Under the pieces are notes generated by a model. That model saw only the letters and a program-made list of their open reading frames with translations. It made no database searches and was not told the origin of the DNA. The position numbers and the translations under genes were made by a program. Positions 13,213 to 53,696 of a stretch of 64,000 bases of DNA are shown one piece after another (position 1 is the first letter of the stretch; every line of letters begins with the position of its first letter). Origin of the DNA: Macrostomum lignano (Eukaryota); contig NIVC01003129.1 in the NCBI GenBank assembly GCA_002269645.1, positions 1-64,000 of the forward strand, given 5' to 3'.

Positions 13213-13331
13213 CAGACACAGACAGACAGACAGACAGACACAGACAGACAGACAGACAGACACAGACAGACAGACAGACAGACAGACACAGACAGACAGA
13301 CAGACACAGACAGACAGACAGACAGACAGAC

Positions 13332-13382
<51 letters not shown>

Positions 13383-30076: not shown

Positions 30077-31429
30077 ATGATTCGCACTACGGCAGGCAGC
30101 AATCTCGGAGGCAAAGGCGCTGGGTAAGGAATTGATCGGACTCGATGTACTTTTAATTGCTACACGTACTGACCAAAGTTTCGGCAAAACTTCCGTTGAG
30201 TGGATTATTCTCCGAATTTTTTTCTATGGCAAACCGTTGAGTGGATTTGTCTCCGAATTTTTGTCTATGGCAAACCGTTGAGTGGATTTGTCTCCGAATT
30301 TTTGTCTATGGCAAACCGTTGAGTGGATTTGTCTCCGAATTTTTGTCTATGGCAAACCGTTGAGTGGATTTGTCTCCGAATTTTTGTCTATGGCAAACCG
30401 TTGAGTGGATTTGTCTCCGAATTTTTGTCTATGGCAAACCGTTGAGTGGATTTGTCTCCGAATTTTTGTCTATGGCAAACCGTTGAGTGGATTTGTCTCC
30501 GAATTTTTGTCTATGGCAAACCGCATTCAACGCTGTACAAAACATCAAATCTTGCTAAACTGTCTGGATGAAATATCTTTTACCCCGCACTGCACAGCTT
30601 CGATGCCGCCCCCCTGGCGCTGTGGACAACCCGGCAGCCCGGCGGAACCGGCCAGCAGCCGGCCCTCAACAGCAACTTCATCAGCAGCCGCAGCGGCCCG
30701 GCAGCGGCCAGCGGCCAGTTCCACCTGCCATTTCCAATGGCCGGTCGCCTACCGCACCGGCACAGACGCGGCGGCGGCCCGCCCGCTGGCAGGACGGTCG
30801 GAGAGCGGCAAGTCGAAGTGCTGACTCGGTTGCCCAGCCTGTACAGCAAGATCCACAGCAATGTGCTGCAGCAGCAGCAGCAACAGCAAAAGCAGCAACC
30901 CGAGCCGCTGCCTTTGCTTCACGGCAGCAAGCGGATGAAGAAGCAGATCCAGCAGCAGCAGCAACAGCAAAAGCAGAAAACTCCCACTGCACTGGACGCT
31001 GAGCCTGGCACTGCTGAGCCCGCATCCGAACCGTCAGACGCTCCGAGGTCCCGGTTTCGAATCTCAGTTGCTGACCAAGTGCCGCAGGAGCAGCGGTCCG
31101 TCGAGTCGCAGAAGCAGCAAAAGCAAAAGCAAAAGCAGCAGCAGCAGCAGCCCAGAAGCGTTCCCATGGCCTACTTCAGCCGCGGCTCCGCCAGCCTACA
31201 CTCGACCTGCTGCGACGACGTCGACACTCGCAGCTGCGACCGGCGCCACCCGGACCAGACGGTGGCCTACAGCCGGGCCGCGGTGTACATTCGCGACAAC
31301 GAGCTGATGCCTGCCGCCAAGGCCCGCCTTATCTGGCGCTGGATGGACGAGCTGGAGCACGCGACACCCTCGGCCAGCCGCCTATTCGTGTACGACCCCG
31401 GCAGCCGCTGGTTCAGCATGGCCGCCTAG
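30077..31429 (+). CDS. Hypothetical polyQ-containing protein; exons 30077-30123, 30598-31429
   Basis: Phase-2 GT-AG intron (GG|GTAAGG ... CACAG|C), GC-rich coding bias, two polyQ runs and an ordered-looking C-terminus. No family recognised. Confidence 0.65.
30190..30525. repeat. 41-bp minisatellite in the intron of the polyQ gene
   Basis: GGCAAACCGTTGAGTGGATTTGTCTCCGAATTTTTGTCTAT. Confidence 0.95.
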
Positions 31430-31502
31430 GGGCGCTTCGGCCCCCGTCAGGGCTGCTTTGCCTCCGTTTGTTAAACTGATTGCTCAGCTGGGGCTTCGGA
31501 AT

Positions 31503-31504
<2 letters not shown>

Positions 31505-31533
<29 letters not shown>

Positions 31534-31555
31534 GTCTGTCTGTCTGTCTGTCTGC

Positions 31556-31599
<44 letters not shown>

Positions 31600-31624
31600 G
31601 TCTGTCTGTCTGTCTGTCTGTCTG

Positions 31625-31675
<51 letters not shown>

Positions 31676-31736
31676 GTGTGTGACTCTGTCTGCCTGCCTG
31701 CCTGCCTGCCTGCCTGTCTGTCTGTCTGTCTGTCTA

Positions 31737-31797
<61 letters not shown>

Positions 31798-31806
31798 GTC
31801 TGTCTG

Positions 31807-31843
<37 letters not shown>

Positions 31844-31846
31844 TAG

Positions 31847-31893
<47 letters not shown>

Positions 31894-31906
31894 ATGTCTG
31901 TCTTAG

Positions 31907-31937
<31 letters not shown>

Positions 31938-31956
31938 GTGTGTGTGAGTCTGTCTA

Positions 31957-31991
<35 letters not shown>

Positions 31992-32080
31992 GTCTGTCTG
32001 TCTGTCTGTCTGTCTGTGTGTGTGTGTCTGTCTGCCTGCCTGTCTGCCTGCCTGTCTGTCTGTCTGTCTGCCTGCCTGCC
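31505..32080. repeat. (TCTG)n microsatellite
   Basis: Direct inspection. Confidence 0.97.
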
Positions 32081-32517
32081 TATACAGCCACTGGAGGCCA
32101 TTCAGTTAAGCCCCTCCCTTCTCAGTGCATTTCGCATCTGCAGCATTGAAAATGACTGCTAAATATACAATGTTGCTGTTCTGCTTGACCGTCTGTTAGA
32201 TTTTTGTTACCTGCTGAAAGGACCGCTTGCCAAGTAAAATAAATATTCGAGCTAGAATGTCCTCAGAGCGGACTGCAGCAGTTTTTGCTGGGCACAGAGT
32301 GACAGCGGGGTAAATTGATAGTAGTATAAAAGGCAAAGTGAATTTTCGCTTTGAATTTTTAATTCTCGATGCCCAATTAACATTCTGCATTCTGTATTTA
32401 CCGCCAGCGCAAGTAATGCATTTTATCTAGAAGCATTTGAAGATGTGTAGCGATCAGCTAATTTTATCCAGCAAGTCCAGGTCGGGCCAGGAGACACAGG
32501 CGACCCGGTGGCCTCAG

Positions 32518-33342: not shown

Positions 33343-33959
33343 CTTGGGACTGATCAGTGATGGGGCAGCCGGTGGGTTCGAATCGGTCTTGCGGTGAGTC
33401 TGCGCTGCTCACCTGCTCGGCTTGGCCTTAAATTCTTCATCTCAAAGAAAGGGATTAAACCGCGCTTCGCCGCAGTCTAAGTGGCTCAGACTGAGGAACC
33501 GAAATTCCCGAAGGAGCTGCCGCTGTCCGGGGGTGTCCGCGCTGCCCGGCCATCCTTGCCTCGGGTTTCCATGAAATGTTTTTGACGAGATTTTTTTTCA
33601 ACTTGTAAATAACATTTTCTAAAAACATCAATTTGAAGGATTTTAGCGGCTTCTAACGGGGAGGCCGGCTGATGGATCCTGTTTCACTGCCGCGCCGAAA
33701 TCTTAAGCCCCATGCTTTGTTCGAGCAGTTTCAGAGTGTTGCCAGGCCGTTTGGGTAATTTCTTTGCCCAGGTGGCGAAGTAAAAACATTTGCTGCTCAA
33801 GAAAGACGGACAGACAGTAACTTCGTTTTCTGGGAGCTAATTCTTTCTCGCGCAGAGATCCGAACCCATCATGTTTTGGTAGCGCCAGGGAATCGAACTC
33901 ACGTTACCGCTGCATCCTAATTAATAATAATTAATACTATATATATAGCATATAGTAGA

Positions 33960-34990
33960 GGCTAGCAGGGAAAGCCGTGGAATTTCCATGGAGCCTACTG
34001 AGAGTGCATAGATTGTGTTTACAGGTGGTGGGACTGCCGTAGGTGAATCCGCCGGAATTCCATATGGGTCGCAATGAACTTGACTTACTTGACTCTACGC
34101 GAGCAGGTGGTTGTGCACTCAAAGGCATGGGTCGCTGCTTAACTCTCTGAGTAAAGGGTAATCTCCACAGAATGTTCTGGGGGTAATTTCCTTCACCCAG
34201 GCGCACTGATTGTACAGCTCCATGGCGCAGAAGCTGATGGCCGTGCGGCCGGAGGTTCCGCTTTCTAAATGCTTCTGGATGGGGACACCGCGTCGAGCAG
34301 ACGGCGGGTAGTCTTCGTTGCCTCTCCTCTGACAAAGAGGTCAAGGGGGGGGGAATGTTTAGGAAGGAGTTCATGCCAGCAAAGGGCGTAGAGGGAGTCG
34401 CGCTCATGATAGCTTGAAAAGCGCGGCCTTGCACCCTGTTAAGAGCTTCAAGGACCCCTTTCACCTCTAGGGCATTGTTCCAAATGAAGCCGGCGAAGGA
34501 GATGGCCGGTCTCACGATGGCAGTGTAAATCCACCAGAGGCGGGGGTGGAGGCCCCACGTAGTGCCGAAAGTTCTGCGGATCTGCGAGAGCTTTGCAGGC
34601 TTTGGTTTGAACCTGTGGTCGAGGGTGACGCCCAGAAATCTGGTTTGTCTCTCCATGGCAACGGGTTTGCCATAGAGGGAGAGCGGTTCAATCCTCCAGT
34701 TACGGCGGCTGGTGAACATGATGGCCATGGTTTTAGACTCAGAGAACCTGAGACCGCAGCTATGTGCCCAGCGCTCGGCACGGTGGATGAAGGCTTGAAG
34801 GAGGTCTCTTAGGACCGCGGGTGTTGGTCCGGCCACAGTGGCGGTAACATCGTCGGCATAGCCGATTTTCTGAACCAGATCCGAGTAACGTCTGCACTCG
34901 TCCATGACCAAGTTCCAGAGAATCGGGCTGAGGACTTCACCTTTCTGGACCTCCACAGAGCGGGAGTGCCAGCAGGCAGTTGACGAAACT
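33960..34990 (-). mobile_element. Degenerate, internally deleted non-LTR retrotransposon (same family as 45656-49131)
   Basis: QKGEVLSPILWNLVMDE..KIGYADDVTA..LRDLLQAFIHRAERWA...TWGLHPRLWWIYTAIVRP aligns with the intact copy. Confidence 0.9.
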
Positions 34991-35842
34991 CCGATTGCAC
35001 ACCTGTTAGCAGCAGCAGCAACTCCTGCACTGGCGCTGACAGGCGCGGATGATGCAGCCTGCCAGCTGGAGTCGCCTACGACGCAGCGAGTCGCTTGTCT
35101 CATGGCCCGGGCCCCCGCTCGTAAGTCATTGTGTTATTCTGCTCTCTCTGGGGCCCAGGGCCCATTGGAGCCCTGCGCGCCGCGTCAACCTGCTCAGTGT
35201 AAGACATCCCATGAAACAGCATCTTAGGATGTCTTACACTGAGTAGTATTGAGTCGTCCCTGGGTCGCCGCAATCCCGGTTGCACTGCGACTCCGGAGCC
35301 TCACTGTACGTCCTTAGAGGTTGCCACAATGGCGGCCGATGCCAGCCTGCAGTCCCGTATAGGGAAAGCTGGCATTTGAGCACACGGCCAAGCACAGCTG
35401 CCAGATCATGCTGCTAGACACGTAGATCCATCCTGTCCCATCTTTGCTGTAGTCGCCAAGATGACGAGTGATCTTTAAAATTTCTACGTCTGGTTAGTCC
35501 GAGAAGCGAGCGTGAAGTCCAGTTTTTAGTTCGGTTAGAGTAGCACTTGGGTTCACATGGATCGCCTCCTCCAGAAAATCCAGCATCTCTTGATCCACGC
35601 TCACGTGCTTACGACCTGACCTCCCTTTGGCATCCTTGCAGACCTTCCCTCTTCACACTCGTGTATTCATTCGGTAGTTCGTTTGATTCCCATAGCACGA
35701 GCGAGGTTTACGTACAAAGCCGTTTTCATGTGTATATCAGATGTAAGTTCTGTGGTGTGTACGAGCATATACGAGTATGAGCCTTTTTCGATCATTATCG
35801 CTCATTCGTGCAGTCGGCATTCTCAAAGAAATAGCAGCTTGT

Positions 35843-36797: not shown

Positions 36798-39700
36798 TCA
36801 GGTATAGAAAATTGGGCCGCAGCCTCCTAGCTTCACCATCGCTGAGTCTGCAGGACAGCTGAAGGCTGACTGGAACTCAGGGATCAGCGACAGCACTCCG
36901 TTGACGCTGCAATTGAGCAGTGTTCATTAAACAATGCGAAGGTTAAAATTTGAAAAAATCAGCTTGAGTCATCGGCTTACTGAATATCCTCTGGCATGAG
37001 GCGGCCCAAGGCTCCCCGGATGTATGAGTACAGCGGATCCCGGGTGAAGCAGAATGTCTGCAATTTCAGTTCAGGCTTATGATACAGGTTCAAGTCCACA
37101 GTAAAGTTGTAACCCTCTCTTTACCTGTGCCCTTTCTTCACCTGTTCCCTCTCTTCACCTGTGCCCTCTCTTCACCTGTGCCCTCTCTTCACCTGTGCCC
37201 TCTCTTCACCTGTGCCCTCTCCACACCCGCCATTTCGGTACCCGTTTTTGACCCTCGGCCTCACCTGTGCCCAGGCAGTGAACAAAGACTGCATTTTGTT
37301 GAGATGGCCAAGCGGCAGCGGGAGCTCCGACCCACCCCCCTCGAAACCGGCGTAAGCCTTCGACACCAGCCGGAGCGCATCCGTCTCAGCAACTGCCGTG
37401 CGCAGAGTTCTCGAGATTATCGGGCTGATGTCCACCTGAGTGCGGGATGGTAATTATCACTTAATCAGTATGGGATTTCACACCGCTTGCCCCAGCTTGA
37501 TCACTCAGCCAGCAGCCCTGCCCCACAGAATCCCTCAGCATGTGCCCTCAGCCACCAGCCCTGCCCCACAGAATCACTCAGCCAGCAGCCCTGCCCCACA
37601 GAATCCCTCAGCCACCAGCCCTGCCCCACAGAATCCCTCAGCCAGCAGCCCTGCCCCACAGAATCCCTCAGCCACCAGCCCTGCCCCACAGAATCCCTCA
37701 GCCACCAGCCCTGCCCCACAGAATCCCTCAGCCACCAGCCCTGCCCCACAGAATCCCTCAGCCAGCAGCCCTGCCCCACAGAATCCCTCAGCCAGCAGCC
37801 CTGCCCCACAGAATCCCTCAGCCAGCAGCCCTGCCCCACAGAATCACCCTCAGCCACCAGCCCTGCCCCACAGAATCTCTCAGCCACCAGCCCTGCCCCA
37901 CAAAATCACTCAGCCAGCAGCCCTGCCCCACAGAATCACCCTCAGCCACCAGCCCTGCCCCACAGAATCCCTCAGCCACCAGCCCTGCCCCACAGAATCC
38001 CTCAGCCAGCAGCCCTGCCCCACAGAATCCCTCAGCCAGCAGCCCTGCCCCACAGAATCCCTCAGCCAGCAGCCCTGCCCCACAGAATCACCCTCAGCCA
38101 GCAGCCCTGCCCCACAAAATCCCTCAGCCACCAGCCCTGCCCCACAGAATCCCTCAGCCAGCAGCCCTGCCCCACAGAATCCCTCAGCCAGCAGCCCTGC
38201 CCCACAGAATCCCTCAGCCAGCAGCCCTGCCCCACAGAATCACCCTCAGCCACCAGCCCTGCCCCACAAAATCCCTCAGCCACCAGCCCTGCCCCACAGA
38301 ATCCCTCAGCCACCAGCCCTGCCCCACAAAATCCCTCAGCCACCAGCCCTGCCCCACAAAATCCTTCAGCCACCAGCCCTGCCCCACAAAATCCCTCAGC
38401 CAGCAGCCCTGCCCCACAGAATCCCTCAGCCAGCAGCCCTGCCCCACAAAATCACTCACATAGTAACTTCTGTTTCCAACCCAATACGGCCCTGCCGTCA
38501 AGTCCCAGTAGGTGAAGTTGACGCACTGCGCCTTCGCCAAATAGCTCTGCCTTGTCCGCTCCGACCACATGGGATTTGAGTTGCCCTGCTGGTCCGTGAG
38601 CTGGCCTTGAAAGAAGAGGTTGGGATTCGAATTTGTCAGAAAATCCCCTGTTCAATCGGCCGGTACCTAACTGGACTAAAATATAATCTCACAAGCACAA
38701 GGTGAATTTTAGGCCAATAGAATGCTCAATAGGAGTCCAATTAGAATCCCACTGGAGTCCAATTAGAATCCCACTGGAGTCCAATTAGAATCCCACTGGA
38801 GTCCAATTAGAATCCCACTGGAGCCCAATTAGAATCCCACTGGAGCCCAATTAGAATCCCACTGGAGTCCCATTAGAATCCCACTGGAGTCCAATTAGAA
38901 TCCCACTGGAGTCCAATTAGAATCCCACTGGAGTCCAATTAGAATCCCACTGGAGTCCAATTAGAATCCCACTGGAGCCCAATTAGAATCCCACTGGAGC
39001 CCAATTAGAATCCCACTGGAGTCCCATTAGAATCCCACTGGAGTCCAATTAGAATCCCACTGGAGTCCCATCGGAATCCCACTGGAGTCCCATCGGAATC
39101 CCACTGGAGTCCCATCGGAATCCCACTGGAGTCCCATCGGAATCCCACTGGAGTCCCATCGGAATCCCACTGGAGTCCCATCGGAATCCCACTGGAGTCC
39201 CATCGGAATCCCACTGGAGTCCCATCCGAATCCCATGTCCAGCAGCCGCAGCAGCTGCAGCAGCTCTGCAGTCACCAGTGGCATCCACAGCCTTGATCAG
39301 CTCAGCCGCCATGCGCTGCCCGATGGTGGCGAAATTGATGTAGCCCGGCAGCTGAGGGGAGAAGAACGGCCACTGCAGAATGCCGGCAGGAACTGTCAGC
39401 TGCGCTGTGGAAGTCATGGACAGCGCCACGTCGAAGGTGGCGCCGCTCCAAGCGGTGGCCTGTGGCACGGTGCCCAGCAGGGAGCCCTGCTTCAGGCGCT
39501 TGAAGTTCTGCCAGCTGATTGAGATGTCCATCATGGGGTAATCCGGGTCAACAGTGAGCTGTCGCGGCCGGGGTGCGTGAAAGTGCGAGAGTTTAGAGCT
39601 GACACACTCTAATCTAGAGTGACACATTTTAATCTGGAGTGACACATTCTAATCTAGAGTGACACATTCTAATCTGGAGAGACACATTCTAATCTAGAGT

Positions 39701-40343
39701 GACACATTTTAATCTAGATTGACACATTCTAATCTAGAGTGACACACTCTAATCTAGAGTGACACATTCTAATCTAGAGTGACACATTTTAATCTGGAGT
39801 GACACATTCTAATCTAGAGTGACACATTCTAATCTGGAGAGACACATTCTAATCTAGAGTGACACATTCTAATCTAGAGTGACACATTTTAATCTAGATT
39901 GACACACTCTAATCTAGAGTGACACATTCTAATCTAGAGTGACACATTCTAATCTAGAGTGACACATTCCAATCTGAAGTGACACACTAATCTAAGAGTA
40001 CTAAATCAAACATTCAGCATCATAATTTACGCTCACATCCTTGTAGTACTCGTCAAGAAACTCATCCCGGATCTCAGTCGGTGAGTAGCCGATCTTGTCC
40101 ACCACAGCCTGGATTTTCATCCTCATCTTGGCTCGTTCGGTGGACTCAATCCAGTCGAGCTTTTCAATGCCGCTGACGAACTCAGACTGGAGAGTTTTGT
40201 ACAGACTGTCCACCTGCGAAAGGGTTTTGTTAGAGTCAGCACTCGGAATGACTGCTTGGAGGCTGCTGGCCCCGAGGCTCATGGGCAAATCTGATTTCAC
40301 ATTCTAGAGGAAGAGAGATGAAAAGAGGGAGAGAGGCGAAGAG

Positions 40344-40397
<54 letters not shown>

Positions 40398-43300
40398 GGA
40401 GAGGGAGAGAGACGGAGAGGGAGAGAGATGAAGAGAAAAGGAGAGAGGCGGAGAGACGGAGAGGGAGAGAGAGGGAGAGAGGCGGAGAGGGAGAGAGATG
40501 AAGAGAAAAGGAGAGGGAGAGAGAGGGAGAGAGATGGAGAGAGATGGAGAGGGAGAGAGAGGGAGAGAGATGGAGAGGGAAAGAGAGGGAGAGAGGCGGA
40601 GAGGGAGAGAGAGGGAGAGAGAGGGAGAGAGAGGGAGAGAGATGGAGAGGGAGAGAGGCGGAGAGACGAAGAGGCAGAGAGAGGGAGAGAGGGGAGCAGG
40701 GCAGAGGTCAACTGCCAAATCGGAGGTGCTCCTTAGGCCCGAGCTCAACCGGGTACAAGTGCAGCCGGTGCAGGATTCATATCCGATATTTATCGCAATA
40801 AGAAATTTACTCTTACGCATGAAACATTTGACAAAACCGAAGTTTGCTAAATTATAACCAGTTTCGTACTAATTGGAGCTCATTACTTCCCATCAGAGGG
40901 AAAGGGGAGATATACCGGTCGAAGAATTATAATCAGAGATCAGAGAGAGCCTGGGGCGAGCTGTACAGAACAAACACAAGTCCCGACCCACAGCCTGCTT
41001 GCTGGAGTCCACCAGGTGGTCCGCAACGAAGAGACTGTTGAGCCCCAGCAACATGAAGGTCTTGGTGCGGTCCAAGCAGTAGTCCAGCCTGCTCTGGTAG
41101 ATGTAGCTGCTGCTGGACAGGCTGGACTCAAACTCGCGCTTGGCGTGAACGTAGGCGCTCGACAGGTCACCGCTGTAATTGCGGATCACCTGCCAATTCA
41201 GGTAGTTGGACAGCCTCCTGTGCGGGGGAGCATGGGTGTGGCATTAGCTGACGGTGACAGGTAAATCCTGTGTCTGTAGCGGGTAAATACTGTGTCTGTA
41301 GCGGGTAAATCCTGCGTCTGTAGCGGGTAAATACTGTGTCTGTAGCGGGTAAATCCTGTGTCTGTAGCGGGTAAATCCTGTGTCTGTAGCGGGTAAATCC
41401 TGTGTCTGTAGCGGGTAAATCCTGTGTCTGTAGCGGGTAAATCCTGTGTCTGTAGCGGGTAAATCCTGTGTCTGTAGCGGGTAAATCCTGTGTCTGTAGC
41501 GGGTAAATCCTGTGTCTGTAGCGGGTAAATCCTGTGTCTGTAGCGGGTAAATCCTGTGTCTGTAGCGGGTAAATAAGTTTATAGCTCATAAAACGTGACT
41601 CCTGCCTCTAACAAGAGGGACTCCCTGTCTGGCAATGAGAACTCGGTCTCAACGGGAATCCACCTGCCTGTTATAATCGACTGGGTGCAGCAACCTGATG
41701 GTCTCCCCAACGTAGGTCATCGCCCGCGTCAGGTAGTCAGCCGTCTGCACTGCCACCCTGGTGGAGCCCTGCACCCCGGACTCGAGGGTGCCGCTGAACA
41801 GCGCAGACCACCTGATTGGCTGGTAGCTCGAGTCCATCTCAGTCAGGCTGATTTGGTTGCCAGGGGCCAGCGGCGGCTTGTCGGGGTCCGGTCCAACGGC
41901 GTTCCTGCTGAACTGTTGGTATTGACAGTGGGACGGTGCTTTGGTAATTGGGAGAATTCTCCCCAACCATATTTCCCTGCTAGGTGAATTCTTCCACAGA
42001 GCTCACATTGGCGAGGGCCGTCTCGATCTCCATGACGTCGAGCACGAAGTTCTCGATGCGCGCCGTGACGCCGTTCGGATTATCGACCGTGCCGGGCTCG
42101 GCGTCGGCAACCAGGAGTTTCGCTGTTGCTCTCATGTACTCCTTGTAGGACTCGCGCTGCCTGTGATACTGGAAATAAAGTACTCTCTGACCCCGTGTAC
42201 TCTCTGACCCTGTGTACTCTCTGACCCTGTGTACTCTCTGACCCTGTGTACTCTCTGACCCTGTGTACTCTCTGACCCTGTGTACTCTCTGACCCTGTGT
42301 ACTCTCTGACCCTGTGTACTCTCTGACCCTGTGTACTCTCTGACCCTGTGTACTCTCTGACCCTGTGTACTCTCTGACCCTGTGTACTCTCTGACCCTGT
42401 GTACTCTCTGACCCCGTGTACTCTCTTACATCCCAAGTGATCTCTGCCCCACATGTACAGCCATTTCCCTGTGTCCTTTCTTCAGTCGCGCACCAGTGCA
42501 CAGACAGCTGCATCCAGTACTCACAAAGTCGAACAGGTACATGGCAGGTAGCATGCCGATCCCGCCGTTGTAAATCTGGAAATAAGGGCGAAATAAGCTG
42601 ACTTGCCGCACTCAGAGCAGAGCACCTGAGCTTCAGGACCTGAGCTTCAGGACAGGCAACACCCTCACCGAAATCGTGTACCGGCCTCCGTCAAGCGGGT
42701 TCGGCTCCACCCGGTACTCGAAGAAGGCCGAAGCTCCGTAGGTTTTCACGGCGGAGAGCAGCTCGCGGTCCAGGTCGAACTGGCCGACCACCGAGCCGTT
42801 GATCACGTAGAACTGACGCCGCAGCAGGTCGGCGAACAGGGCGCCGCGCACCCGTTCGATTCGAAAGTCGTCAATGCAGGTGCCGAAAATTGTTTTCAAC
42901 TTTCGTTCGTATGAGTCCGCCGAGTTGCGAACGATCGGCGAACGGAGGGCGGCCTCGAGCTTGTCGGCGTTCTGCCTGATCAGCTCGCCGCTGACCGTCC
43001 GCTCGCGGTAAGCCGGGTTTATCGGCATCACCTGCTCGGCAGCGCCGCAGGCGAAAGCGTAGAAATTATCGCATGGGCTGGCCGAGCGGTTGAGGAAACT
43101 CACCTGGGGAGAAATGGTGGCTTGAAGTTTAGAAGTACAGGGAAACTGCGAGCTGTGATTCCAACCGAGGGAATCGGTGGGGAATCGGTGGAGAATCGGT
43201 GGGGAATCGGTGGGGAATCGGTGGGGAATCGGTGGGTAATCGGTGGGGAATCGGTGGGGAATCGGTGGGTAATCGGTGGGGAATCGGTGGGTAATCGGTG

Positions 43301-43814
43301 GGGAATCGGTGGGGAATCGGTGGGTAATCGGTGGGTAATCGGTGGGTAATCGGTGGGTAATCGGTGGGGAATCGGTGGGTAATCGGTGGGTAATCGGTGG
43401 GGAATCGGTGGGGAATCGGTGGGGAATCGGTGGGTAATCGGTGGGTAATCGGTGGGGAATTGGTGGGGAATCGGTGGGGAATCGGTGGGGAATCGATGGG
43501 GAATCGGTGGGGAATCGGTGGGGAATCTGACTGCAGTGGTCCCTCACCAGGTAGCCGGAGCGGTACAGGCAGGCCTCACTCTGGCACGCAGTCTCGACCC
43601 CACCACCGCCGCCAGCACCGCCGCCGTGGGTGGCAGCCAGGGCGATGACCACAACCAGCAGCAAAACGACAATGCCAGCCAGGATGTTCTCAGCGATGGA
43701 GTGCCTGGCCGGGTTGAGCTGCTGCCGGACCCGCTCCCAGATCCTGGCGGTGACTGAGCTGGTCTCGGGCTCCGCGTACATCTCCATGTTGATGGACTCT
43801 GGATCGGCAGCCAT
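36798..43814 (-). CDS. Neprilysin/ECE (M13) homolog, predicted inactive; 12 exons: 43814-43548, 43103-42669, 42575-42525, 42168-42007, 41912-41695, 41217-40992, 40213-40037, 39558-39276, 38605-38460, 37435-37265, 37057-36981, 36906-36798 (~773 aa)
   Basis: Type II TM, C..EAC, SASPCDNFYAFACG, LSNYLNWQV, KIGY, PAGILQWPFF, INFATIG, HVNGVLSLIPEFQSAFSCP. Phases are consistent throughout. Confidence 0.9.
37120..37215. repeat. 17-bp repeat containing a copy of the adjacent donor site
   Basis: TTCACCTGTGCCCTCTC; its minus strand GGGCACAGGTGA equals the exon 10 junction. Confidence 0.9.
37490..38460. repeat. 30-bp minisatellite in neprilysin intron 9
   Basis: CCCTCAGCCAGCAGCCCTGCCCCACAGAAT. Confidence 0.95.
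38735..39235. repeat. 22-bp minisatellite in neprilysin intron 8
   Basis: GGAGTCCAATTAGAATCCCACT. Confidence 0.95.
39595..39990. repeat. 20-bp minisatellite in neprilysin intron 7
   Basis: GAGTGACACATTCTAATCTA. Confidence 0.95.
40305..40700. repeat. GA-rich tract in neprilysin intron 6
   Basis: Direct inspection. Confidence 0.95.
41260..41575. repeat. 22-bp minisatellite in neprilysin intron 5
   Basis: GGGTAAATCCTGTGTCTGTAGC. Confidence 0.95.
42180..42425. repeat. 17-bp minisatellite in neprilysin intron 3
   Basis: GTACTCTCTGACCCTGT. Confidence 0.95.
43165..43527. repeat. 11-bp minisatellite in neprilysin intron 1
   Basis: GAATCGGTGGG / TAATCGGTGGG. Confidence 0.95.
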
Positions 43815-44501: not shown

Positions 44502-47500
44502 ATGCACGGGTTCGGATATTTACTTGTCATGCTGGGGTCTCTGTCCATTGTGCTGCAGCTTCTGGCCGCATTTGGCTCCGCCGTCGATTTAGCGACGACT
44601 AAGAATCAGCAGAGCGGCGCCAGCGAAAATAGCCAAGAGGAGCTTGAGACTCAGGCCAATGCGGCCCAGCTGCAGGCGATGGAAGCCAACCCGGATCCCT
44701 ACAAGCACCATGCTGTGCACTTGTGCAACACTAACTTGGACTGTCTGGCTATGCACGGCGGCTGCAGCCACGACCAGTACATTGGGGACAGCGAGGCCAA
44801 GTGAGTGCTGGGCTGGATATTTTTATTGCTTGTGTTTGAGACCCCCCGCACACACGAACACAGCGGGGGAGGAGGGTGGAGGTTAGCCAGACCCCAGGCA
44901 CACGAGAACACACCGGGGAAAGTAGGGGTGGGGGTTAATAAGGCCCCAGGCACACAAGAACACAGCGGGGGAGGAGGGTGGAGGTTAGCCAGACCCCAGG
45001 CACACGAGAACACAGCGGGGAAAGGAGGGGTGGGGGTTAATAAGGCCCCAGGCACACGAGAACACAGCGGGGAAATAGGGGTGGAGGTTAATAAGGCCCC
45101 AGGCACACAAGAACACAGCGGGAGAGGAGGGGTGGAGGTTAGCCAGACCCCAGGCACACGAGAACACAGCGGGGAAAGGAGGGGTGGGGGTAAATAAGGC
45201 CCCAGGCACACACGAACACAGCGGGGGAGGAGGGTGGAGTTTAGCCAGACCCCAGGCACACGAGAACACAGCGGGGAAAGGAGGGGTGGAGGTTAATAAG
45301 GCCCCAGGCACACAAGAACACAGCGGGAGAGGAGGGGTGGAGGTTAATAAGGCCCCAGGCACACAAGAACACAGCGGGAGAGGAGGGGTGGAGGTTAATA
45401 AGGCCCCAGGCACACAAGAACACAGCGGGAGAGGAGGGGTGGAGGTTAATAAGGCCCCAGGCACACAAGAACACAGCGGGAGAGGAGGGGTGGGGGTTAA
45501 TAAGGCCACAGGCACACAAGAACACAGCGGGAGAGGAGGGGTGGGGGTTAATAAGGCCACAGGCACACAAGAACACAGCGGGAGAGGAGGGGTGGGGGTT
45601 AATAAGGCCCCAGGCACACAAGAACACAGCGGGAGAGGAGGGGTGGGGGTTAATACGGCGCGACGGCGAGATGATCCCAGTAGAGCTTGTCACACTGGTC
45701 GAGCTCTGCTCCACCAGAAACTATGAGCTGCTCGTGGCAGGTGACATCAATGCCCACCACACCCACTGGGGCAGTTCTGATATAAACCAGAGAGGTGAAG
45801 ACTTCCTGGCTTATATTGCTACTACAACCCTTGAGTTCTGTAACTCGGGTAGTACCCCTACCTTCAATAACGGACGCCGATCGGAGGTGCTGGATGCCAC
45901 CCTCGCCACGCCCAGGCTCTTCCAGAGCACTAGGGAATGGCGGGTGCTTCCTGAGGCGTCCCTCTCCGATCACAAGTTCATCTCTTTCACGCTGGCCAGC
46001 GCCCGTAACGCAGGCCAGCTTTACTGGAAACGGAATGCTAGGAATACCGACTGGACCGCCTTCAGGCTTGCCCTGGAGGAGACCTATCGTTGCACTAGCG
46101 CTCCAGTCTCCATCAACACCTGCGAAGAAGCAGATGAATTTGCGGCCGCACTTACGGACTCGCTCACTGCTGCCTTCGAAGCCTCATGCCCACTAAAGGC
46201 ATATAAAGGCAAACAGTCGGCCCCATGGTGGAACCCGCAGCTTGGCGACCTCCGTCGCAGAGCCAAAAGGCTTCACCGCAGGGCCCAAAAAACTAAAAAC
46301 CCGGCCGACCAAACCGCCTACCTGAACTCTATCCACGAGTTCAAGAGGCAGGTTAGGAACGCCAAAACCAACAAGTGGCGCGAATACTGTGAGGAACTTG
46401 AGGGCTCCCGCCCCACCTCCAGAATCGTTAAAGCCCTCACCCTGGACAAAATGTCCAAACTCTCCTCAGTCAAGAGAGCCGACGGCTCGCTCACTGAGAA
46501 CCCAGGAGAAACACTGGAAGCGATGCTAACAGCGTTTTTCCCGAACGAGCCAGCTAGGCCCGGCCCCCCTGACCACTCAGTGGGCGGACACGTACTGGCT
46601 GACTCAATCATCACGGAGGACCGCGTTACTAAAGCTGTCTCCTCCTTCAAACCCTTCAAATCCCCAGGACCGGACGGCGTTGTGCCAGCCTTCCTGCGGG
46701 AGGCGGTGAAATGCACCGGTTTCCTGCGGAACCTTTGCCGGCTTCTGAAAGCCTGCATTGTGCTCGGCTTTGTTCCGAAATCCTGGACCGAGGCCAAGGT
46801 GGTCTTTATCCCCAAGCCTGGCCGACCGGACTACCGGTCCATTAAATCCTTCAGACCAATTAGCCTCACCTCCTCATTGGTGAAGCTGTTAGAGAGACTG
46901 GTGCTCTGGCGCCTCCTCTCTGTGGAACTGAAGAACAAGCCGCTCAGTGAGAACCAGCATGCCTTTCGGGCAGGCAGGTCCACGGAGAGCGCGCTTCACG
47001 TTCTGGTTGACATGCTGGAGAAAGCCGTTCTTGGTAATGGCTACGCTCTCGCTGTCTTCCTCGACATTGTTGGAGCCTTCGATAATGTCCTCTTTGAGGC
47101 CTTTGACAGAGCTCTACGTGCTAGAGGAACCCACTCGCACCTCACCCGGTGGATCATGTATATGATCAGCCACCGTACTGCCACCGCACACCTGTTGGGC
47201 CACCAACGGACGGTAACCGTCTGCAAAGGCAGCCCCCAGGGCGGTGTCCTCTCTCCAGTTCTCTGGAACATGGTCATCGATGAGCTCCTCCAGGACAGCC
47301 ATCTTGACCCCATCCTCAAGGTCGGTTACGCCGATGATGTCACAGCCGTGGCATCCGGACCGTCACCTGAAACCCTTAGAGATCTTTTGCAAAACTTCAT
47401 TCGCTCTGCTGAACGTTGGGCGGACAGGTGCGGCCTCAGGCTCTCCGAGACCAAAACTGTCGCGATCATGTTCACCAGCAGGGTAAACTGGCGTATCCGC

Positions 47501-49610
47501 CCACTAAAGCTTTACGGGGTGGAAATTCCATCCTGCAAGCAAACCAAGTGTCTCGGCGTTACGCTGGACCACCGGCTGAGCTGGTCCACCCACGTCCAGG
47601 CCAAAACCAAAAAAGCCCTCGCGATTCTTGCGCAGCTGCGCAGAGCCGTCGGCACCACCTGGGGCCTCACCCCAAAGCGTCTCTGGTGGATCTATACCGC
47701 AATGGTCCGACCGGCCGTTACATACGCCGGCCTGGTCTGGACCAGCGCCTTGCAGATTAAAACCTGCCACGAAGCCCTCAAAAAGGTGCAGGGACGTGCG
47801 TGCCGCATGATCCTGAATGCCCCGCTCTCTGCTCCCTTTGACGGCCTCAACGCCTTTCTCTGCCTCCCGCCTCTGGACATCTTTGTCCGTCGCGAGGCTG
47901 CTAAAACCACCCGCCGGCTCATCGAGGCTGGTGTTAGCTTCAAGCCACAAAGAGCGATGGCGAAGCGCAAGCTCCTGCCGCACTCTGACCTGTGCCTTAA
48001 AGTTCTGGAGGAGAGTGGGAGTGCGGCTGTCCTTTCGGACGCTGAACCGCGCTCCCTCAACCTCTACCAACGCTTCAAGGTCACGATCCCCTCCAGGGAG
48101 AACGCCAACGACAGCTGGGCCCCTCAGGAGGTTCACTGCTTCACTGACGGATCCTCCAAAGACGGTTTATCCGGCTTTGGAGTCTGCATCCTTATCAACG
48201 GCCGCGTGATTGCTACTCACGCCCAACACACTGGCAGACTCTCCAGCGTCTTCCAGAATGAAGTCCTTGCCATCAGCTCCTGTGCAGCTGAGCTCCACCG
48301 CAAGGACTTCAAGGACAGAAGAATCTTCTTCCACTCTGACAGCCAGGCCGCTTTACAGGCCCTGTGTCACACCACTACGAACTCCCGAACAGTCCGCGAC
48401 TGTATCGGGCAGCTCAACAAGCTGGCTCGGAGGAACACCGTCCGGCTCACGTGGATCCCAGGACACGCCGGCTTCAAAGGTAACGAGCTCGCCGACTCCC
48501 TCGCTAAGGCGGGCTGTTCCGGCTCGCCCCTTGGCCCCGTGCCCCTGGCCCCCATCCCCGCCACAGTCATTAATCGTCAGATTAACGACTGGGCGGACAT
48601 CCTGCACTTGCGCAGATGGGATGGTATCTCCAACTGCCGCCAATCTCGTGCGGCAGTGCCCAATCCGTCCCTCAAGCTGCGGAGAATCCTTTTGAATCAA
48701 AATCGAAAAGATATCCGCGCTCTCACTATGACCTTCACAGGTCACGGTTGCTTTGCCAGGCACTGCTTCCTCCGATGTGTTCGCCGGAGTGAACTCTGCC
48801 CCTTCTGCAGCCTCGAGAATGAAGATGCCATGCACTTCGTCTGCTACTGCCCGGCCTTCAACCGAGACCGGCTCAACCACCTCGGGCCCAACCCGTCCCT
48901 GGACGACGTTTGCCGGCCCGAGAACATCCCACGGCTCATCCGGTTCCTCCGGGCCACCAAGCGAGCCTCCGTCTTCCCCACCGAAGACAACGCTGCAGAC
49001 AGGACCGGCAGACCTCCCTGACCGGCCCCGCGCCCTAGCCTATGCGGGTCTTTCAGGGATTAGCGGAATGGGCGACGCTCGCCTCCCCGCTGCGTCTTCG
49101 GACCGCCCTGCAGCTAAGTCAAGTAAGTCAAGGGGGTTAATAAGGCCCCAGGCACACAAGAACACAGCGGGAGAGGAGGGGTGGGGGTTAATAAGGCCCC
49201 AGGCACACAAGAACACAGTGGCAGTGGGAAACAAGAAACCGCGCTATTAATGCAAAGCTTCCAAAGAACCCCGCTCTTACCACCCTGGCAGGCAGGATAC
49301 GGAGCTGCTGCCCAAGTGCTACCAGCCGCACGGTCTATCAACCCGAGGAGTTTGCCTGTGCACCGAGTGCTCCAACGACCTGCACTGCCACCGCCAGTCC
49401 CGCTGTCCGCACTCGCTGACAGGCCAGTGCGTCAGCGAGCATTCAGTGAAGACCTGCCGCTGCGGGCAATTCCGCCATGACTACAGCAAGATGGGAGATA
49501 GCGGCAGCAGAGAGCGATCCAGTGTTGACTGGAACTCCCTGTTGGACTATTTGATCTGTCGCAACATTTTGCTGCGCAGGTTGCTGTCTGATTCCGTGCA
49601 GTGTAGCTGA
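44502..49610 (+). CDS. Secreted Cys-rich protein (205 aa); exons 44502-44800, 49292-49610
   Basis: Signal peptide MHGFGYLLVMLGSLSIVLQLLAAFGSA, acidic pro-like region, and two modules C-x5-C-x5/6-C...C...CxC. The phase-2 GT-AG intron is consistent. Confidence 0.8.
44845..49220. repeat. ~51-bp minisatellite (44845-45655 and 49132-49220), split by the LINE
   Basis: GGGGTGGAGGTTAATAAGGCCCCAGGCACACAAGAACACAGCGGGAGAGGA. Confidence 0.93.
45656..49131 (+). mobile_element. Young 5'-truncated non-LTR retrotransposon (partial APE + RT + RNase H, intact 1116-aa ORF 45671-49021)
   Basis: APE motifs VAGDINAHH..WGS and SDH; RT motifs PQGGVLSP..WN and GYADD; RNase H motifs FTDGS, EVLAI, SDSQAAL, WIPGHAG..GNELAD; C-terminal Cys/His. 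Tail AGTCAAGTAAGTCAA and TSD GGGGGTTAATA (45645-45655, 49132-49142). Architecture resembles the LOA/R1/I groups; clade not assigned. Confidence 0.97.
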
Positions 49611-50802: not shown

Positions 50803-50984
50803 GCTGATGAGAATTCTGCCCCAGAGCTGAGGGATATTCTATAGGTGTTGGCGTATAGACCGTTTTTGAAACTTTGCCATAGATGATTCTCGGCAGGACG
50901 GACGGGTGCCCAGGGTGAGAGCAAAACACTCAGGTGTTCCTAAGACTATGTATCAGTATATACCGTTTATTCACAGATTGTTTT

Positions 50985-52340: not shown

Positions 52341-53076
52341 TTGTGATTTAAAGTTGCGTTCTCGAGTATCTGGAGACATTGTGTCTCGTGTCCTGAGGTT
52401 GGAGATTGATGGGGTTCCAAAATATTCCTTCTCTCGTAAGACAGTTTCGGCGTTGCTTCGGTTTTGAGAAATTATGAGTATTTTTCCTATATTTTTTGCG
52501 CTCCAGGTGAATAATAAAAAATATCCCAAGGCGAGAGACGGTGCCCATCAATTAAACAAATTGGCATCGCTCGGCCCAATCAATAACAGCCAAGCAACTA
52601 ATGCCAATTAATTATTAAAGAGAGCTGCAGCCCCCCTCATTCCACGGCTCATTGTTGTCCAGTTTGGGAAAAACTCAACTCAGCTTTGGCAGAAATAATT
52701 GGTTTTTCAGCAGCTGGAAAAGCTGGAAAAGTCTCTGAAAGCAAATCTGCTGGCTGCCTCTCAGTTCTATAATATTTATAAATAAATATAATAAATGTAT
52801 AAATGTATAAATATAATAAATATTTATATATATTTATAACAACATAATGCTTTATTAGAATGCATACTTTTAGCTCGTACTTATTATGAAATACGAGGCA
52901 GCGACGAAAAGTTTTAAGGAACAGCGCTTCTGGATTGGAAATTCTACGAGTTATGGATTTGTTTTTTCAATAGTCCAAACACAAACATCCAGAAGCAAAA
53001 GGACTGCGAGCACCCCGACGGAACGCCTTCGGAGACATTGTCCCCCTACCACAACCAGAGCTGAGGCAACTCTGCC

Positions 53077-53389: not shown

Positions 53390-53696
53390 CCCATTCCGTT
53401 GACCCCTGAGCACATACAAGCGCAGACATACGCACAGGCACACACTGCCACAGGAGTGGCGCTAATTTTATTTATCGTTAGGCATGTACGCTTTACTGTG
53501 CATTGGGGGTTGGCCTTCAAGGGCGTTGATTGCGCGAACAGAGCCAAACCGGCCTGGGCCGCTGGTACATCAAAGTGCCGCGCTAGACCACTGGGCTACG
53601 CCCCCCCCACACCAATACTTTGCGCACGAATATGCACTCATACACACGCTCACGCAGGGTGTACAGCGGCCCTGGCTTTCTAATCGTCAGCATGTA

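What the first reader, a model, noticed from the sequence alone, without database searches (positions are those of the whole stretch)
37265..39320. Neprilysin pseudo-peptidase: all three zinc ligands lost in an intact gene
Seen: INFATIGQRMA-AELIK-AVDATG aligns to NYGAIG.VIG-HEITH-GFDDQG, so both His are lost and the Glu is kept (39292-39306). TL-RTAVAE aligns to TL-GENIAD, so the third ligand Glu is lost. The ~773-aa frame, TM and Cys scaffold are intact. Established: M13 activity needs HExxH plus GENIAD; inactive M13 members are known in insects. Inference: a non-catalytic peptide-binding decoy or receptor, or a structural surface protein.
Basis: partly seen in the sequence, partly recalled or inferred. 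Interest (0 to 1): 0.7.

Follow-up and report, generated by a model that had tools for sequence, protein, structure and literature searches.

The report
Flatworm neprilysin-like protein without catalytic site
This is an intact, selectively maintained gene of the flatworm Macrostomum lignano for a membrane-anchored neprilysin-family protein that has lost its zinc site and most other catalytic residues. It belongs to an old group of such "dead" peptidases shared with annelids, molluscs, brachiopods, nemerteans and amphioxus, so it is a new member of a known kind.

Summary
On the minus strand, codons 39306-39292 read A-E-L-I-K where M13 peptidases have H-E-x-x-H. Codons 37402-37385 read R-T-A-V-A-E where they have G-E-N-I-A-D.

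The full gene runs 43814-36798 (minus) and encodes 782 aa. It has one N-terminal transmembrane helix, ten cysteines matching the five conserved neprilysin disulfides, and six N-glycosylation sequons. Its predicted fold matches neprilysin and ECE-1 (TM 0.83-0.88).

Other catalytic and substrate-docking residues are also replaced: N542 to A, D650 to E, W693 to F, H711 to L, R717 to H. Only the E584 and D590 equivalents remain.

The organism is Macrostomum lignano. A second genomic copy differs by 41 synonymous and 14 non-synonymous changes (dN/dS 0.10). A 54%-identical spliced transcript from an unidentified organism and a 44%-identical paralogue both keep A-E-x-x-K.

The nearest relatives outside Macrostomum all have degenerate sites too. 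They form one clade (NJ bootstrap 98) with Owenia, Lingula, Tubulanus, molluscs and Branchiostoma, and none retains H711.

It is therefore a non-catalytic M13 homologue, comparable to Drosophila Goe and the Nepl proteins, but from a lineage that looks much older. Its function is unknown. A decoy that binds peptides in the normal substrate mode is weakened, because the docking residues are lost too.

The parts
36798..43814 (-). Complete coding region of the M13 pseudo-peptidase gene: 12 exons, 2349 nt CDS, 782 aa, ATG at 43814, stop at 36800-36798.
   Evidence: A spliced model was built against P0001 and P0002. All junctions are GT-AG except one GC-AG, and there is no internal stop. Pfam gives Peptidase_M13_N 1.2e-54 and Peptidase_M13 3.6e-23.
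43548..43814 (-). Exon 1: cytoplasmic N-terminus (residues 1-43), TM helix (residues 44-62, coordinates 43685-43629), Gly-rich stalk, and the first cysteine pair C77/C82.
   Evidence: The Kyte-Doolittle 19-residue maximum is 3.1 at residue 44, and there is only one such segment.
42669..43103 (-). Exon 2. Holds C100, C108, C165 and R124, the equivalent of neprilysin R102.
42525..42575 (-). Exon 3 (17 codons, IYNGGIGMLPAMYLFDF).
42007..42168 (-). Exon 4.
41668..41912 (-). Exon 5. It ends in a GC donor (GCAGGT). An alternative GT donor about 27 nt upstream would remove 9 codons, as in model P0002.
   Evidence: The GC donor is conserved as GCAAGT in the second copy L002. The long form matches P0003 and P0005 in length.
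40992..41217 (-). Exon 6. Contains the clade-specific motif Y409-V-H411-A-K-R414-E-F (41153-41130) and C434.
   Evidence: Residues 403-417 are the most conserved 15-residue stretch among the three Macrostomum-type proteins, 87% invariant. In the clade, Y409 is kept in 100% of members and H411 and R414 in 83%. Outside the clade each is found in 20% of sequences or fewer.
40037..40213 (-). Exon 7.
39276..39558 (-). Exon 8. Holds A566 in place of N542 (39426-39424), PAGILQWP, and the former zinc-binding helix.
39292..39306 (-). A606-E607-L608-I609-K610 in place of H583-E584-x-x-H587.
   Evidence: DNA read. Alignments. The motif is invariant in P0001, P0003 and P0005.
38460..38605 (-). Exon 9 (holds C643).
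37265..37435 (-). Exon 10, the former GENIAD helix.
37385..37402 (-). R676-T677-A678-V679-A680-E681 in place of G-E646-N-I-A-D650.
   Evidence: DNA read. Alignment.
36981..37057 (-). Exon 11. Holds F723 in place of W693, C724, and L741 (37000-36998) in place of H711, followed by P-E-D.
36798..36906 (-). Exon 12. Holds VNGVLSLIPEF, C764 and C776. The C-terminus is C-G-P-I-F-Y-T-stop instead of C-x-x-W.
37545..38458 (.). Intron 9 minisatellite (30-nt unit, about 30 copies).
38732..39235 (.). Intron 8 minisatellite (22-nt unit, about 23 copies).

Best explanation
**Shown**
- The gene encodes a type II membrane-anchored, neprilysin-fold ectodomain protein of Macrostomum lignano. It lacks the residues neprilysin uses to hold zinc and to catalyse peptide-bond hydrolysis.
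- It is intact and selectively maintained.
- It belongs to a lineage of M13 homologues shared by flatworms, annelids, brachiopods, nemerteans, molluscs and amphioxus. In that lineage the transition-state histidine (H711) and most other catalytic and docking residues are gone in every sampled member.

**Inferred**
- Catalysis was already crippled in the common ancestor of this lineage. The three zinc ligands then decayed lineage by lineage, and all three are gone in Macrostomum.
- Lys610, at the position of H587, probably fills the empty metal site and pairs with the retained acidic residues E607 or E681. That would keep the two former zinc-binding helices together.
- The protein sits on the cell surface and works by binding, not cleaving. 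The most likely model is a non-enzymatic partner or regulator of cell-surface signalling, like Drosophila Gone early. A decoy holding peptides in the normal substrate register is less likely.
- The newly conserved Y409/H411/R414 segment is the best candidate for the surface that matters.
For: **Gene and protein**
- 12-exon model with no stops.
- Both Pfam M13 domains match.
- HMMER matches ECE-1 at 5.6e-45 and neprilysin at about 1e-39, with residue-level alignment of the motifs.
- The AlphaFold model has pLDDT 79 and pTM 0.77. Foldseek matches neprilysin and ECE-1 at E about 1e-31, target-normalised TM 0.83-0.88.
- One hydrophobic helix at residues 44-62, ten cysteines aligned to the five conserved neprilysin disulfides, and six sequons.

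**Loss of the catalytic apparatus**
- A606, K610, T677, E681, L741, A566, F723 and H747 stand opposite H583, H587, E646, D650, H711, N542, W693 and R717.
- Those residues are 84-100% conserved in 86 canonical M13 proteins.

**Selection**
- Against the second copy (L002, encoding P0001) there are 41 synonymous and 14 non-synonymous differences. dS is 0.078, dN is 0.0079, ratio 0.10, p = 2.5e-15.
- Introns show about 6% mismatches and the flanks 6-12% divergence, against 2.3% in exons.
- P0003, a spliced 2.5-kb transcript 54% identical, and P0005, a paralogue 44% identical, both keep A-E-x-x-K.
- The former HExxH segment is the second most conserved stretch among these three proteins.

**Clade**
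- An exhaustive HMMER search ranks only degenerate-site proteins directly after Macrostomum.
- They come from Owenia, Lingula, Branchiostoma, Tubulanus and many molluscs.
- The NJ clade of 24 has bootstrap 98.
- With 88 diagnostic columns removed, or using the non-catalytic domain alone, Macrostomum plus the 16 core members still sit in a group of 20-28 taxa in about 85-89% of replicates. Support for the exact 24-member clade falls to 49 and 39.
- Amphioxus P0025 hits Owenia better (498 bits) than an amphioxus canonical M13 (369 bits).
- H711 is kept in 0 of 23 clade members.
- By my count from the columns, a Lys or Arg sits at a former zinc-ligand position in 14 of 23 clade members. Arginines at those positions are reported for Nepl15 (PMC7822871).
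Against: - No expression data for the M. lignano gene itself could be obtained here.
- No biochemical test of zinc binding or activity exists.
- The tree is neighbour-joining on the 150 best hits only. Relationships inside the clade and its sister group are unresolved (bootstraps 3-40). Fast-evolving inactive proteins can attract each other artificially.
- Model coordinates could not be inspected, so the Lys610 salt-bridge idea is untested.
- R124, the equivalent of R102 that binds a substrate's free carboxylate, is invariant in Macrostomum, along with R132 and E129. So some form of peptide binding is not excluded.
- A few clade members still have H-E-x-x-H or H..H..D. The timing of the loss of zinc binding is therefore uncertain.
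Confidence: 0.72

Rival explanations
1. Peptide-sequestering decoy. The closed M13 cavity still binds neuropeptides that active M13 enzymes would cleave, and so protects or buffers them. This has been proposed for Drosophila Nepl15.
For: - The fold and the disulfide scaffold are intact.
- The PAGxLQ strand and D613 (D590) are kept, and R124, E129 and R132 (R102, D107, R110) are invariant in Macrostomum.
- The former active-site helix is strongly conserved among the paralogues.
- The idea is published for Nepl15 (PMC7822871, PMC8223033).
Against: - N542 to A, R717 to H, W693 to F and H711 to L remove the main backbone-docking and S1' contacts.
- R102-type residues vary across the clade.
- The protein is membrane-anchored, whereas most proposed decoys are secreted (PMC8223033).
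Confidence: 0.2
2. A decaying duplicate, that is a young pseudogene that merely has not yet acquired a stop codon. M. lignano carries several copies of most genes.
For: - The genome holds at least two near-identical copies.
- Introns are swollen with minisatellites and LINE elements flank the gene.
Against: - dN/dS is 0.10, with 41 synonymous and 14 non-synonymous changes.
- All 11 splice sites are conserved in both copies.
- The same substitutions occur in proteins 44-54% identical, and degenerate sites occur across phyla.
- A relative is transcribed and spliced.
Confidence: 0.03
3. Still an enzyme. A different set of residues, for example E607, D613 and E681, or the newly conserved H411, binds a metal and supports hydrolysis or another reaction.
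For: - E584 and D590 equivalents are kept, and D650 is conservatively replaced by Glu.
- A new conserved His and Arg (H411, R414) appear in the clade.
Against: - No histidine remains at any ligand position.
- H711 is absent in all clade members.
- The general base Glu is not conserved across the clade.
- Mutating H583, H587 or E646 abolishes neprilysin activity (work cited in PMC7822871).
Confidence: 0.04
4. Assembly or alignment artefact. The motifs are misread because of sequencing errors, a wrong frame or a wrong exon.
For: Public models of this gene (P0002, P0004) are visibly faulty.
Against: - The codons were read directly.
- The exons are colinear and gap-free with an independent locus whose product equals P0001 exactly.
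- HMMER columns at the motifs have top posterior confidence.
Confidence: 0.01

Closest known systems
Drosophila Gone early (Goe, CG9634, Nepl2)
   Same: A type II transmembrane M13 homologue with all zinc-ligand positions substituted (EAxxD ... V). It acts on the cell surface without peptidase activity (PMC4242634, PMC11266112).
   Different: Orthology was not tested here. Goe has a 129-residue cytoplasmic tail against about 43 residues here. Published inactive Drosophila M13 genes are described as Drosophila-specific expansions about 35 My old (PMC2259306). This gene's clade spans several phyla.
Drosophila Nepl15 and the other Neprilysin-like (Nepl) proteins
   Same: [quoted passage not shown] Basic residues replace zinc ligands. 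They are conserved and expressed (PMC8223033, PMC7822871).
   Different: Most Nepl proteins are secreted, whereas this one keeps the membrane anchor. Nepl15 loses the general-base Glu, which is kept here. No phenotype or expression data exist for the flatworm gene.
Human neprilysin and ECE-1 (structures 1dmt, 6sh1, 3dwb)
   Same: Same two-domain fold (TM 0.83-0.88), same five disulfides and same topology.
   Different: About 20% identity. H583, H587, E646, D650, H711, N542, W693, R717 and the C-terminal Trp are all replaced.
ECEL1 / DINE subfamily
   Same: In the NJ tree the pseudo-peptidase clade sits near fish ECEL1 and invertebrate 'ECE homologs'. ECEL1 also has no known substrate (PMC2259306).
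   Different: ECEL1 keeps HExxH and the other catalytic motifs. Support for the grouping is weak, with bootstraps 35-40.
Unnamed spiralian and amphioxus 'endothelin-converting enzyme 1-like / homolog' proteins (for example Owenia CAH1786331, Lingula XP_013399075, Branchiostoma XP_019617448)
   Same: They are the closest relatives outside Macrostomum (27-32% identity). They share the loss of H711, N542 and W693, the P-E-D-x-x-V-N segment and the Y409/H411/R414 signature.
   Different: They keep different remnants of the zinc site, often the second His. Macrostomum has lost all three ligands and, unlike most of them, also R717. These proteins carry automatic enzyme names, and the searches here found no paper describing them.

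Membership tests
Peptidase family M13 (homology and fold) | Peptidase_M13_N plus Peptidase_M13 domains | tested here: met
   Pfam E-values are 1.2e-54 and 3.6e-23, both above the gathering scores.
Peptidase family M13 (homology and fold) | Two-domain neprilysin fold | tested here: met
   AlphaFold model pLDDT 79.4. Foldseek against neprilysin and ECE-1 gives E about 1e-31 and TM 0.83-0.88.
Peptidase family M13 (homology and fold) | Type II membrane topology with a short cytoplasmic N-terminus | tested here: met
   A single hydrophobic segment at residues 44-62 and no other. Sequons and all cysteines lie C-terminal to it. Topology is inferred from sequence, not measured.
Peptidase family M13 (homology and fold) | Conserved cysteine scaffold (neprilysin C56-C61, C79-C734, C87-C694, C142-C410, C620-C746) | tested here: met
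   There are exactly ten cysteines (77, 82, 100, 108, 165, 434, 643, 724, 764, 776). Nine are aligned to their neprilysin counterparts. The tenth, C776 opposite C746, is aligned.
Catalytically active M13 peptidase (Nep class as defined in PMC8223033) | HExxH zinc-binding and catalytic motif | tested here: not met
   The motif reads A-E-L-I-K.
Catalytically active M13 peptidase (Nep class as defined in PMC8223033) | ENIAD motif (third zinc ligand E646, and D650) | tested here: not met
   T-A-V-A-E: E646 becomes T and D650 becomes E.
Catalytically active M13 peptidase (Nep class as defined in PMC8223033) | NAY/FY substrate-binding motif (N542) | tested here: not met
   D-V-A-L-S-M: N542 becomes A.
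Catalytically active M13 peptidase (Nep class as defined in PMC8223033) | C-terminal CxxW | tested here: not met
   The Cys is kept but the tail is C-G-P-I-F-Y-T with no Trp.
Catalytically active M13 peptidase (Nep class as defined in PMC8223033) | Transition-state His711 and Arg717 | tested here: not met
   L741 and H747.
Catalytically active M13 peptidase (Nep class as defined in PMC8223033) | Zinc content and peptidase activity | not testable with these tools
   Needs recombinant protein.
M13 non-peptidase homologues (Nepl/Goe-type, by definition rather than by descent) | Clear neprilysin similarity but lacking one or more of the four catalytic motifs | tested here: met
   All four motifs are lacking (rows above).
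M13 non-peptidase homologues (Nepl/Goe-type, by definition rather than by descent) | Maintained by selection and expressed | tested here: inconclusive
   Selection is shown by dN/dS 0.10. Expression is shown only for the related transcript P0003/L001, not for the M. lignano gene.
M13 non-peptidase homologues (Nepl/Goe-type, by definition rather than by descent) | Orthology with Drosophila Goe or any Nepl gene | not tested
   No Drosophila sequence could be brought into the tree. The second word-indexed search returned nothing useful.
Spiralian plus amphioxus pseudo-M13 clade (defined here) | Groups with Owenia, Lingula, mollusc, Tubulanus and Branchiostoma degenerate-site proteins | tested here: met
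   NJ bootstrap 98. The grouping of Macrostomum with the core members persists in about 85-89% of replicates after removing diagnostic columns, although support for the exact 24-member clade falls to 39-49. BLAST ranking agrees.
Spiralian plus amphioxus pseudo-M13 clade (defined here) | Shared derived states: no H711, P-E-D-x-x-V-N, Y409/H411/R414, Y637, F292 | tested here: met
   All are present in the window protein.

The most novel reading that the evidence does not exclude
The window gene represents an undescribed lineage of M13 pseudo-peptidases that predates the protostome-deuterostome split. It is found in flatworms, annelids, brachiopods, nemerteans, molluscs, possibly rotifers, and amphioxus, and is apparently absent from vertebrates. 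The lineage lost catalysis once and then acquired its own conserved surface (Y409-x-H411-x-x-R414, P-E-D-x-x-V-N). This implies an old, conserved non-enzymatic function at the cell surface. It would be far older than the roughly 35-My Drosophila-specific inactive M13 expansions known so far.
Probability: 0.5. Interest if true: 0.5.

Novelty: new member of a known kind. Interest (0 to 1): 0.35.

Why it matters
Inactive neprilysin homologues are known mainly from Drosophila, and only Goe, Frma and Nepl15 have any assigned role. The 2024 review of pseudo-metallopeptidases lists Goe alone for family M13 (PMC11266112).

If the clade found here is real, catalytically dead M13 proteins are not just recent lineage-specific by-products of gene expansion. 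They would include a lineage kept for hundreds of millions of years in many marine phyla. It is currently mis-labelled by automatic annotation as 'endothelin-converting enzyme'.

Macrostomum lignano is transparent, regenerating, and open to RNAi and transgenesis. It would be a practical place to find out what such a protein does.

For this genome scan the practical lesson is more modest. The gene should be annotated as an M13 non-peptidase homologue, not as neprilysin.

Tried and rejected
**Steps that failed or gave nothing**
I built the spliced model by hand instead.
I used the 98%-identical P0001 in its place. As a result, transcripts encoding exactly the window protein could not be looked up.
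- A second word-indexed protein search with a 19-sequence clade profile returned only Macrostomum and bacterial M13 proteins. It did not even return the alignment's own members, so it said nothing about Drosophila Goe or the Nepl genes.
- Literature searches for the locus tag and for flatworm neprilysins found nothing relevant.

**Hypotheses rejected**
- Pseudogene: rejected on dN/dS, conserved splice sites and deep conservation.
- Artefact: rejected by the direct DNA reading and the second locus.

**A worry that was resolved**
- The three shortest introns diverge by only about 2% against dS 0.078. This raised the concern that dS was inflated.
- Longer introns and the flanks show 5-12% divergence, so dS is in line with non-coding DNA.

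**Limits**
- The apparent sister position next to ECEL1-like proteins has bootstrap 35-40 and is not claimed.
- I could not read the coordinates of the AlphaFold model. Cavity geometry and the proposed Lys610 salt bridge are untested.
Full report
**What is in the sequence**

The window is eukaryotic. The region holds short exons separated by introns packed with minisatellites. The neprilysin-like reading frames all lie on the minus strand.

A first protein search identified the organism as the free-living flatworm Macrostomum lignano:
- P0001 (BOX15_Mlig014428g3, 782 aa) is 98% identical to the window product.
- P0002 (UniProt A0A1I8GZR8, auto-named 'Neprilysin') is a faulty model of the window copy itself.

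I used P0001 as a guide and searched for splice-site pairs that reproduce it. This gave a 12-exon model:
- Exons: 43814-43548, 43103-42669, 42575-42525, 42168-42007, 41912-41668, 41217-40992, 40213-40037, 39558-39276, 38605-38460, 37435-37265, 37057-36981 and 36906-36798.
- The CDS is 2349 nt and encodes 782 aa with no internal stop.
- Ten introns are GT-AG. Intron 5 has a GC donor, which the second genomic copy also has (as GCAAGT). An alternative GT donor would delete nine codons, as in P0002. The long form matches the length of the relatives.

Those minisatellites create long spurious plus-strand ORFs.

**Checking the observation**

Read directly from the minus strand:
- 39306-39292 is gct gag ctg atc aag, which is A-E-L-I-K.
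- 37402-37385 is cgc acg gca gtt gct gag, which is R-T-A-V-A-E.

The product matches both Pfam M13 domains (1.2e-54 and 3.6e-23). It also matches solved ECE-1 and neprilysin sequences (5.6e-45 and about 1e-39). In those alignments A-E-L-I-K lies opposite H-E-x-x-H, and T-A-V-A-E lies opposite E-N-I-A-D.

I took a profile alignment of the best 150 relatives plus 19 earlier hits. Of these, 112 near-full-length single-domain proteins were used for the table and tree, and 86 of those are canonical:

| Neprilysin residue | Window residue | Kept in 86 canonical M13 proteins |
|---|---|---|
| N542 | A566 | 84% |
| H583 | A606 | 98% |
| E584 | E607 (kept) | 100% |
| H587 | K610 | 100% |
| D590 | D613 (kept) | 100% |
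| E646 | T677 | 97% |
| D650 | E681 | 99% |
| W693 | F723 | 85% |
| H711 | L741 | 91% |
| R717 | H747 | 100% |

The C-terminal C-x-x-W is C-G-P-I-F-Y-T. So the zinc site, the transition-state histidine, the main substrate-docking residues and part of the S1' pocket are all gone.

**What is kept**
- There is a single strongly hydrophobic segment at residues 44-62, after a 43-residue N-terminus.
- There are exactly ten cysteines, aligned to the five conserved neprilysin disulfides.
- There are six N-x-S/T sequons in the ectodomain.
- An AlphaFold model of the 98%-identical P0001 has pLDDT 79 and pTM 0.77. It superposes on neprilysin and ECE-1 with target-normalised TM 0.83-0.88.

The protein is therefore a folded, probably glycosylated, type II surface protein of the M13 fold. 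Topology and glycosylation are inferred from sequence.

**Is it a live gene?**

A second locus in the public M. lignano assembly (L002, NIVC01000099.1) carries the same 12 exons with no gaps. Its product equals P0001 exactly.
- The two coding sequences differ at 55 sites: 41 synonymous and 14 non-synonymous. dS is 0.078, dN is 0.0079 and dN/dS is 0.10.
- Under neutrality about 76% of changes would be non-synonymous. The binomial p is 2.5e-15.
- Aligned intron sequence differs by about 6% mismatches and the flanks by 6-12%, against 2.3% in exons.
- None of the 14 amino-acid differences touches the sites above.

Two more distant proteins keep A-E-L-[IV]-K and lack the GENIAD glutamate:
- P0005 is an M. 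lignano paralogue, 44% identical.
- P0003 is 54% identical and comes from a 2533-nt Logan contig. That contig has an uninterrupted ORF and a 170-nt 3' UTR, so it is a spliced mRNA from an unidentified, probably related species.

Among these three proteins 35% of ectodomain positions are invariant. The former HExxH segment (residues 606-620) reaches 67%, the second highest 15-residue window.

The gene is not a pseudogene. I could not obtain transcript evidence for the M. lignano gene itself.

**Where it belongs**

An exhaustive HMMER search of 1.84 billion representatives found 9269 M13 relatives. I used a profile of P0001, P0003 and P0005.

Directly after the Macrostomum sequences come proteins scoring 490-326 bits, and every one has a degenerate HExxH. 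Examples are RMxxH, AQxxL, QNxxH, RExxN, QExxN, HExxN and KYxxF. Their sources are:
- Owenia fusiformis (annelid)
- Lingula anatina (brachiopod)
- Tubulanus polymorphus (nemertean)
- Nucella, Patella, Haliotis, Physella, Aplysia, Littorina, Dreissena and Gigantopelta (molluscs)
- Branchiostoma belcheri and B. lanceolatum (amphioxus)

NCBI's automatic names for them are 'endothelin-converting enzyme 1-like' or 'homolog'.

A neighbour-joining tree gave the following (112 proteins, 667 columns, 100 bootstraps):
- One clade of 24 with bootstrap 98. It unites these proteins with the Macrostomum group, two Seison (rotifer) proteins and another M. lignano protein (P0052, HExxQ).
- The result does not depend on the catalytic columns. 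I repeated it with 88 clade-diagnostic columns removed, and again with the non-catalytic N-domain alone. Macrostomum plus the 16 core members still fell in a group of 20-28 taxa in about 85-89 of 100 replicates. Support for the exact 24-member clade fell to 49 and 39.
- Amphioxus P0025 is more similar to Owenia P0021 (498 bits, 39% identity) than to an amphioxus canonical M13 (369 bits).

Within the clade:
- H711 is kept in 0 of 23 members.
- W693 is kept in 1, N542 in 4, H583 in 4 and E646 in 4.
- New residues are conserved instead: F292 (96%), Y409 (100%), H411 (83%), R414 (83%) and Y637 (96%). A P-E-D-x-x-V-N segment replaces H-S-P-x-x-F-R-V-x-G.
- The stretch holding Y409, H411 and R414 (residues 403-417) is the most conserved part of the Macrostomum proteins, 87% invariant.

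The simplest reading is that catalysis was disabled once, before these phyla diverged. The zinc ligands then decayed independently, and completely in Macrostomum. This is inference. NJ on a biased sample cannot exclude attraction among fast-evolving inactive proteins. The internal branches and the sister group (weakly ECEL1-like, bootstrap 35-40) are unresolved.

**How it most likely works**

Shown: it lacks the residues neprilysin uses to hold zinc and to catalyse hydrolysis, it keeps the fold, and it is under selection.

Inferred:
- Lys610 at the H587 position probably occupies the vacated metal site and pairs with E607 or E681. By my count from the columns, 14 of 23 clade members have Lys or Arg at one of the three former ligand positions. 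Arginines do the same in Drosophila Nepl15 (PMC7822871).
- The protein probably acts at the cell surface by binding. The docking residues N542 and R717 and the S1' residue W693 are lost along with the catalytic ones. I therefore rate a classical substrate-mode decoy (proposed for Nepl15) below a Goe-like role as a non-enzymatic surface partner or regulator (PMC4242634).
- The invariant R124, E129 and R132 (R102, D107 and R110 equivalents) in Macrostomum keep some peptide binding possible.

**Comparison with what is known**
- Inactive M13 homologues are established. Bland et al. 2008 described them as Drosophila-specific expansions conserved for about 35 My, with no known role (PMC2259306).
- FlyBase now lists 21 Nepl genes, defined by the lack of one or more of HExxH, ENIAD, NAY/FY and CxxW (PMC8223033).
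- Goe is a type II membrane pseudo-peptidase acting in germ-cell signalling (PMC4242634). Nepl15 affects lipid and glycogen storage (PMC7822871).
- The 2024 review of pseudo-metallopeptidases lists only Goe for M13 (PMC11266112).
- Searches found no paper on flatworm or spiralian inactive M13 proteins.

By definition the window gene is an M13 non-peptidase homologue. Descent from the same ancestor as any Drosophila Nepl gene was not tested.

**Verdict**

Its function is unknown. The kind is known, so the finding itself is of modest interest. The added result is a well-supported cross-phylum clade of degenerate-site M13 proteins with its own conserved signature. That is the part worth following up.

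Noticed in passing
window 45671-49021 (+): An intact 1116-aa ORF of a non-LTR (LINE) retrotransposon lies about 1.9 kb upstream of the M13 gene's start, on the opposite strand. It has endonuclease, reverse transcriptase and RNase H domains.
   Followed up: partly
window 33937-35103 (-): A reverse-transcriptase fragment (RVT_1, C-terminal half only) lies about 1.7 kb downstream of the M13 gene. It is probably a truncated LINE copy.
   Followed up: partly
window 37113-43527, introns of the M13 gene: Nearly every intron longer than 200 nt is filled by a different minisatellite. Units are 10-30 nt with up to 38 copies and 89-99% matches. Intron lengths differ up to five-fold between the two genomic copies (for example 450 vs 2319 nt and 1024 vs 193 nt), while the exons are colinear.
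   Followed up: partly
window 41668 (intron 5 donor) and L002 12147: A GC-AG intron is conserved in both gene copies (GCAGGT in the window, GCAAGT in L002). A nearby GT donor would give a 9-codon shorter product, as in the public model P0002. This could be alternative splicing.
   Followed up: partly
window 61745-63334 (+): A 529-aa open frame has ANF_receptor and Lig_chan-Glu_bd domains. It is the N-terminal part of an ionotropic glutamate receptor-like gene.
   Followed up: no
window 9916-10548 (+), 12492-13727 (+), 19211-20335 (+), 23436-24065 (+): Other coding pieces in the window are EMC4 (ER membrane complex subunit 4), a dual-specificity phosphatase domain, a Nop14-like fragment and a protein-kinase domain exon.
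   Followed up: no
window 50930-52471 and 53484-54148; 30150-30550; 31416-32105: Further large tandem arrays give long repeat-encoded ORFs in several frames. They include a 41-nt unit array at about 30150-30550 and a GACA-type array at 31416-32105. No Pfam match was found for the one such ORF tested (30737-31426).
   Followed up: no
protein P0052 (BOX15_Mlig004184g1), not in the window: M. lignano has at least one further M13 protein with a partly degenerate site (HExxQ, E646 to W, H711 to W). It falls in the same clade on a long branch.
   Followed up: no
window exons vs L002; introns 2, 4 and 11: The three shortest introns (74-94 nt) differ by only about 2% between the two gene copies. Synonymous sites and longer introns and flanks differ by 6-8% or more. 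Short introns may be constrained, or this may be a small-sample effect.
   Followed up: partly
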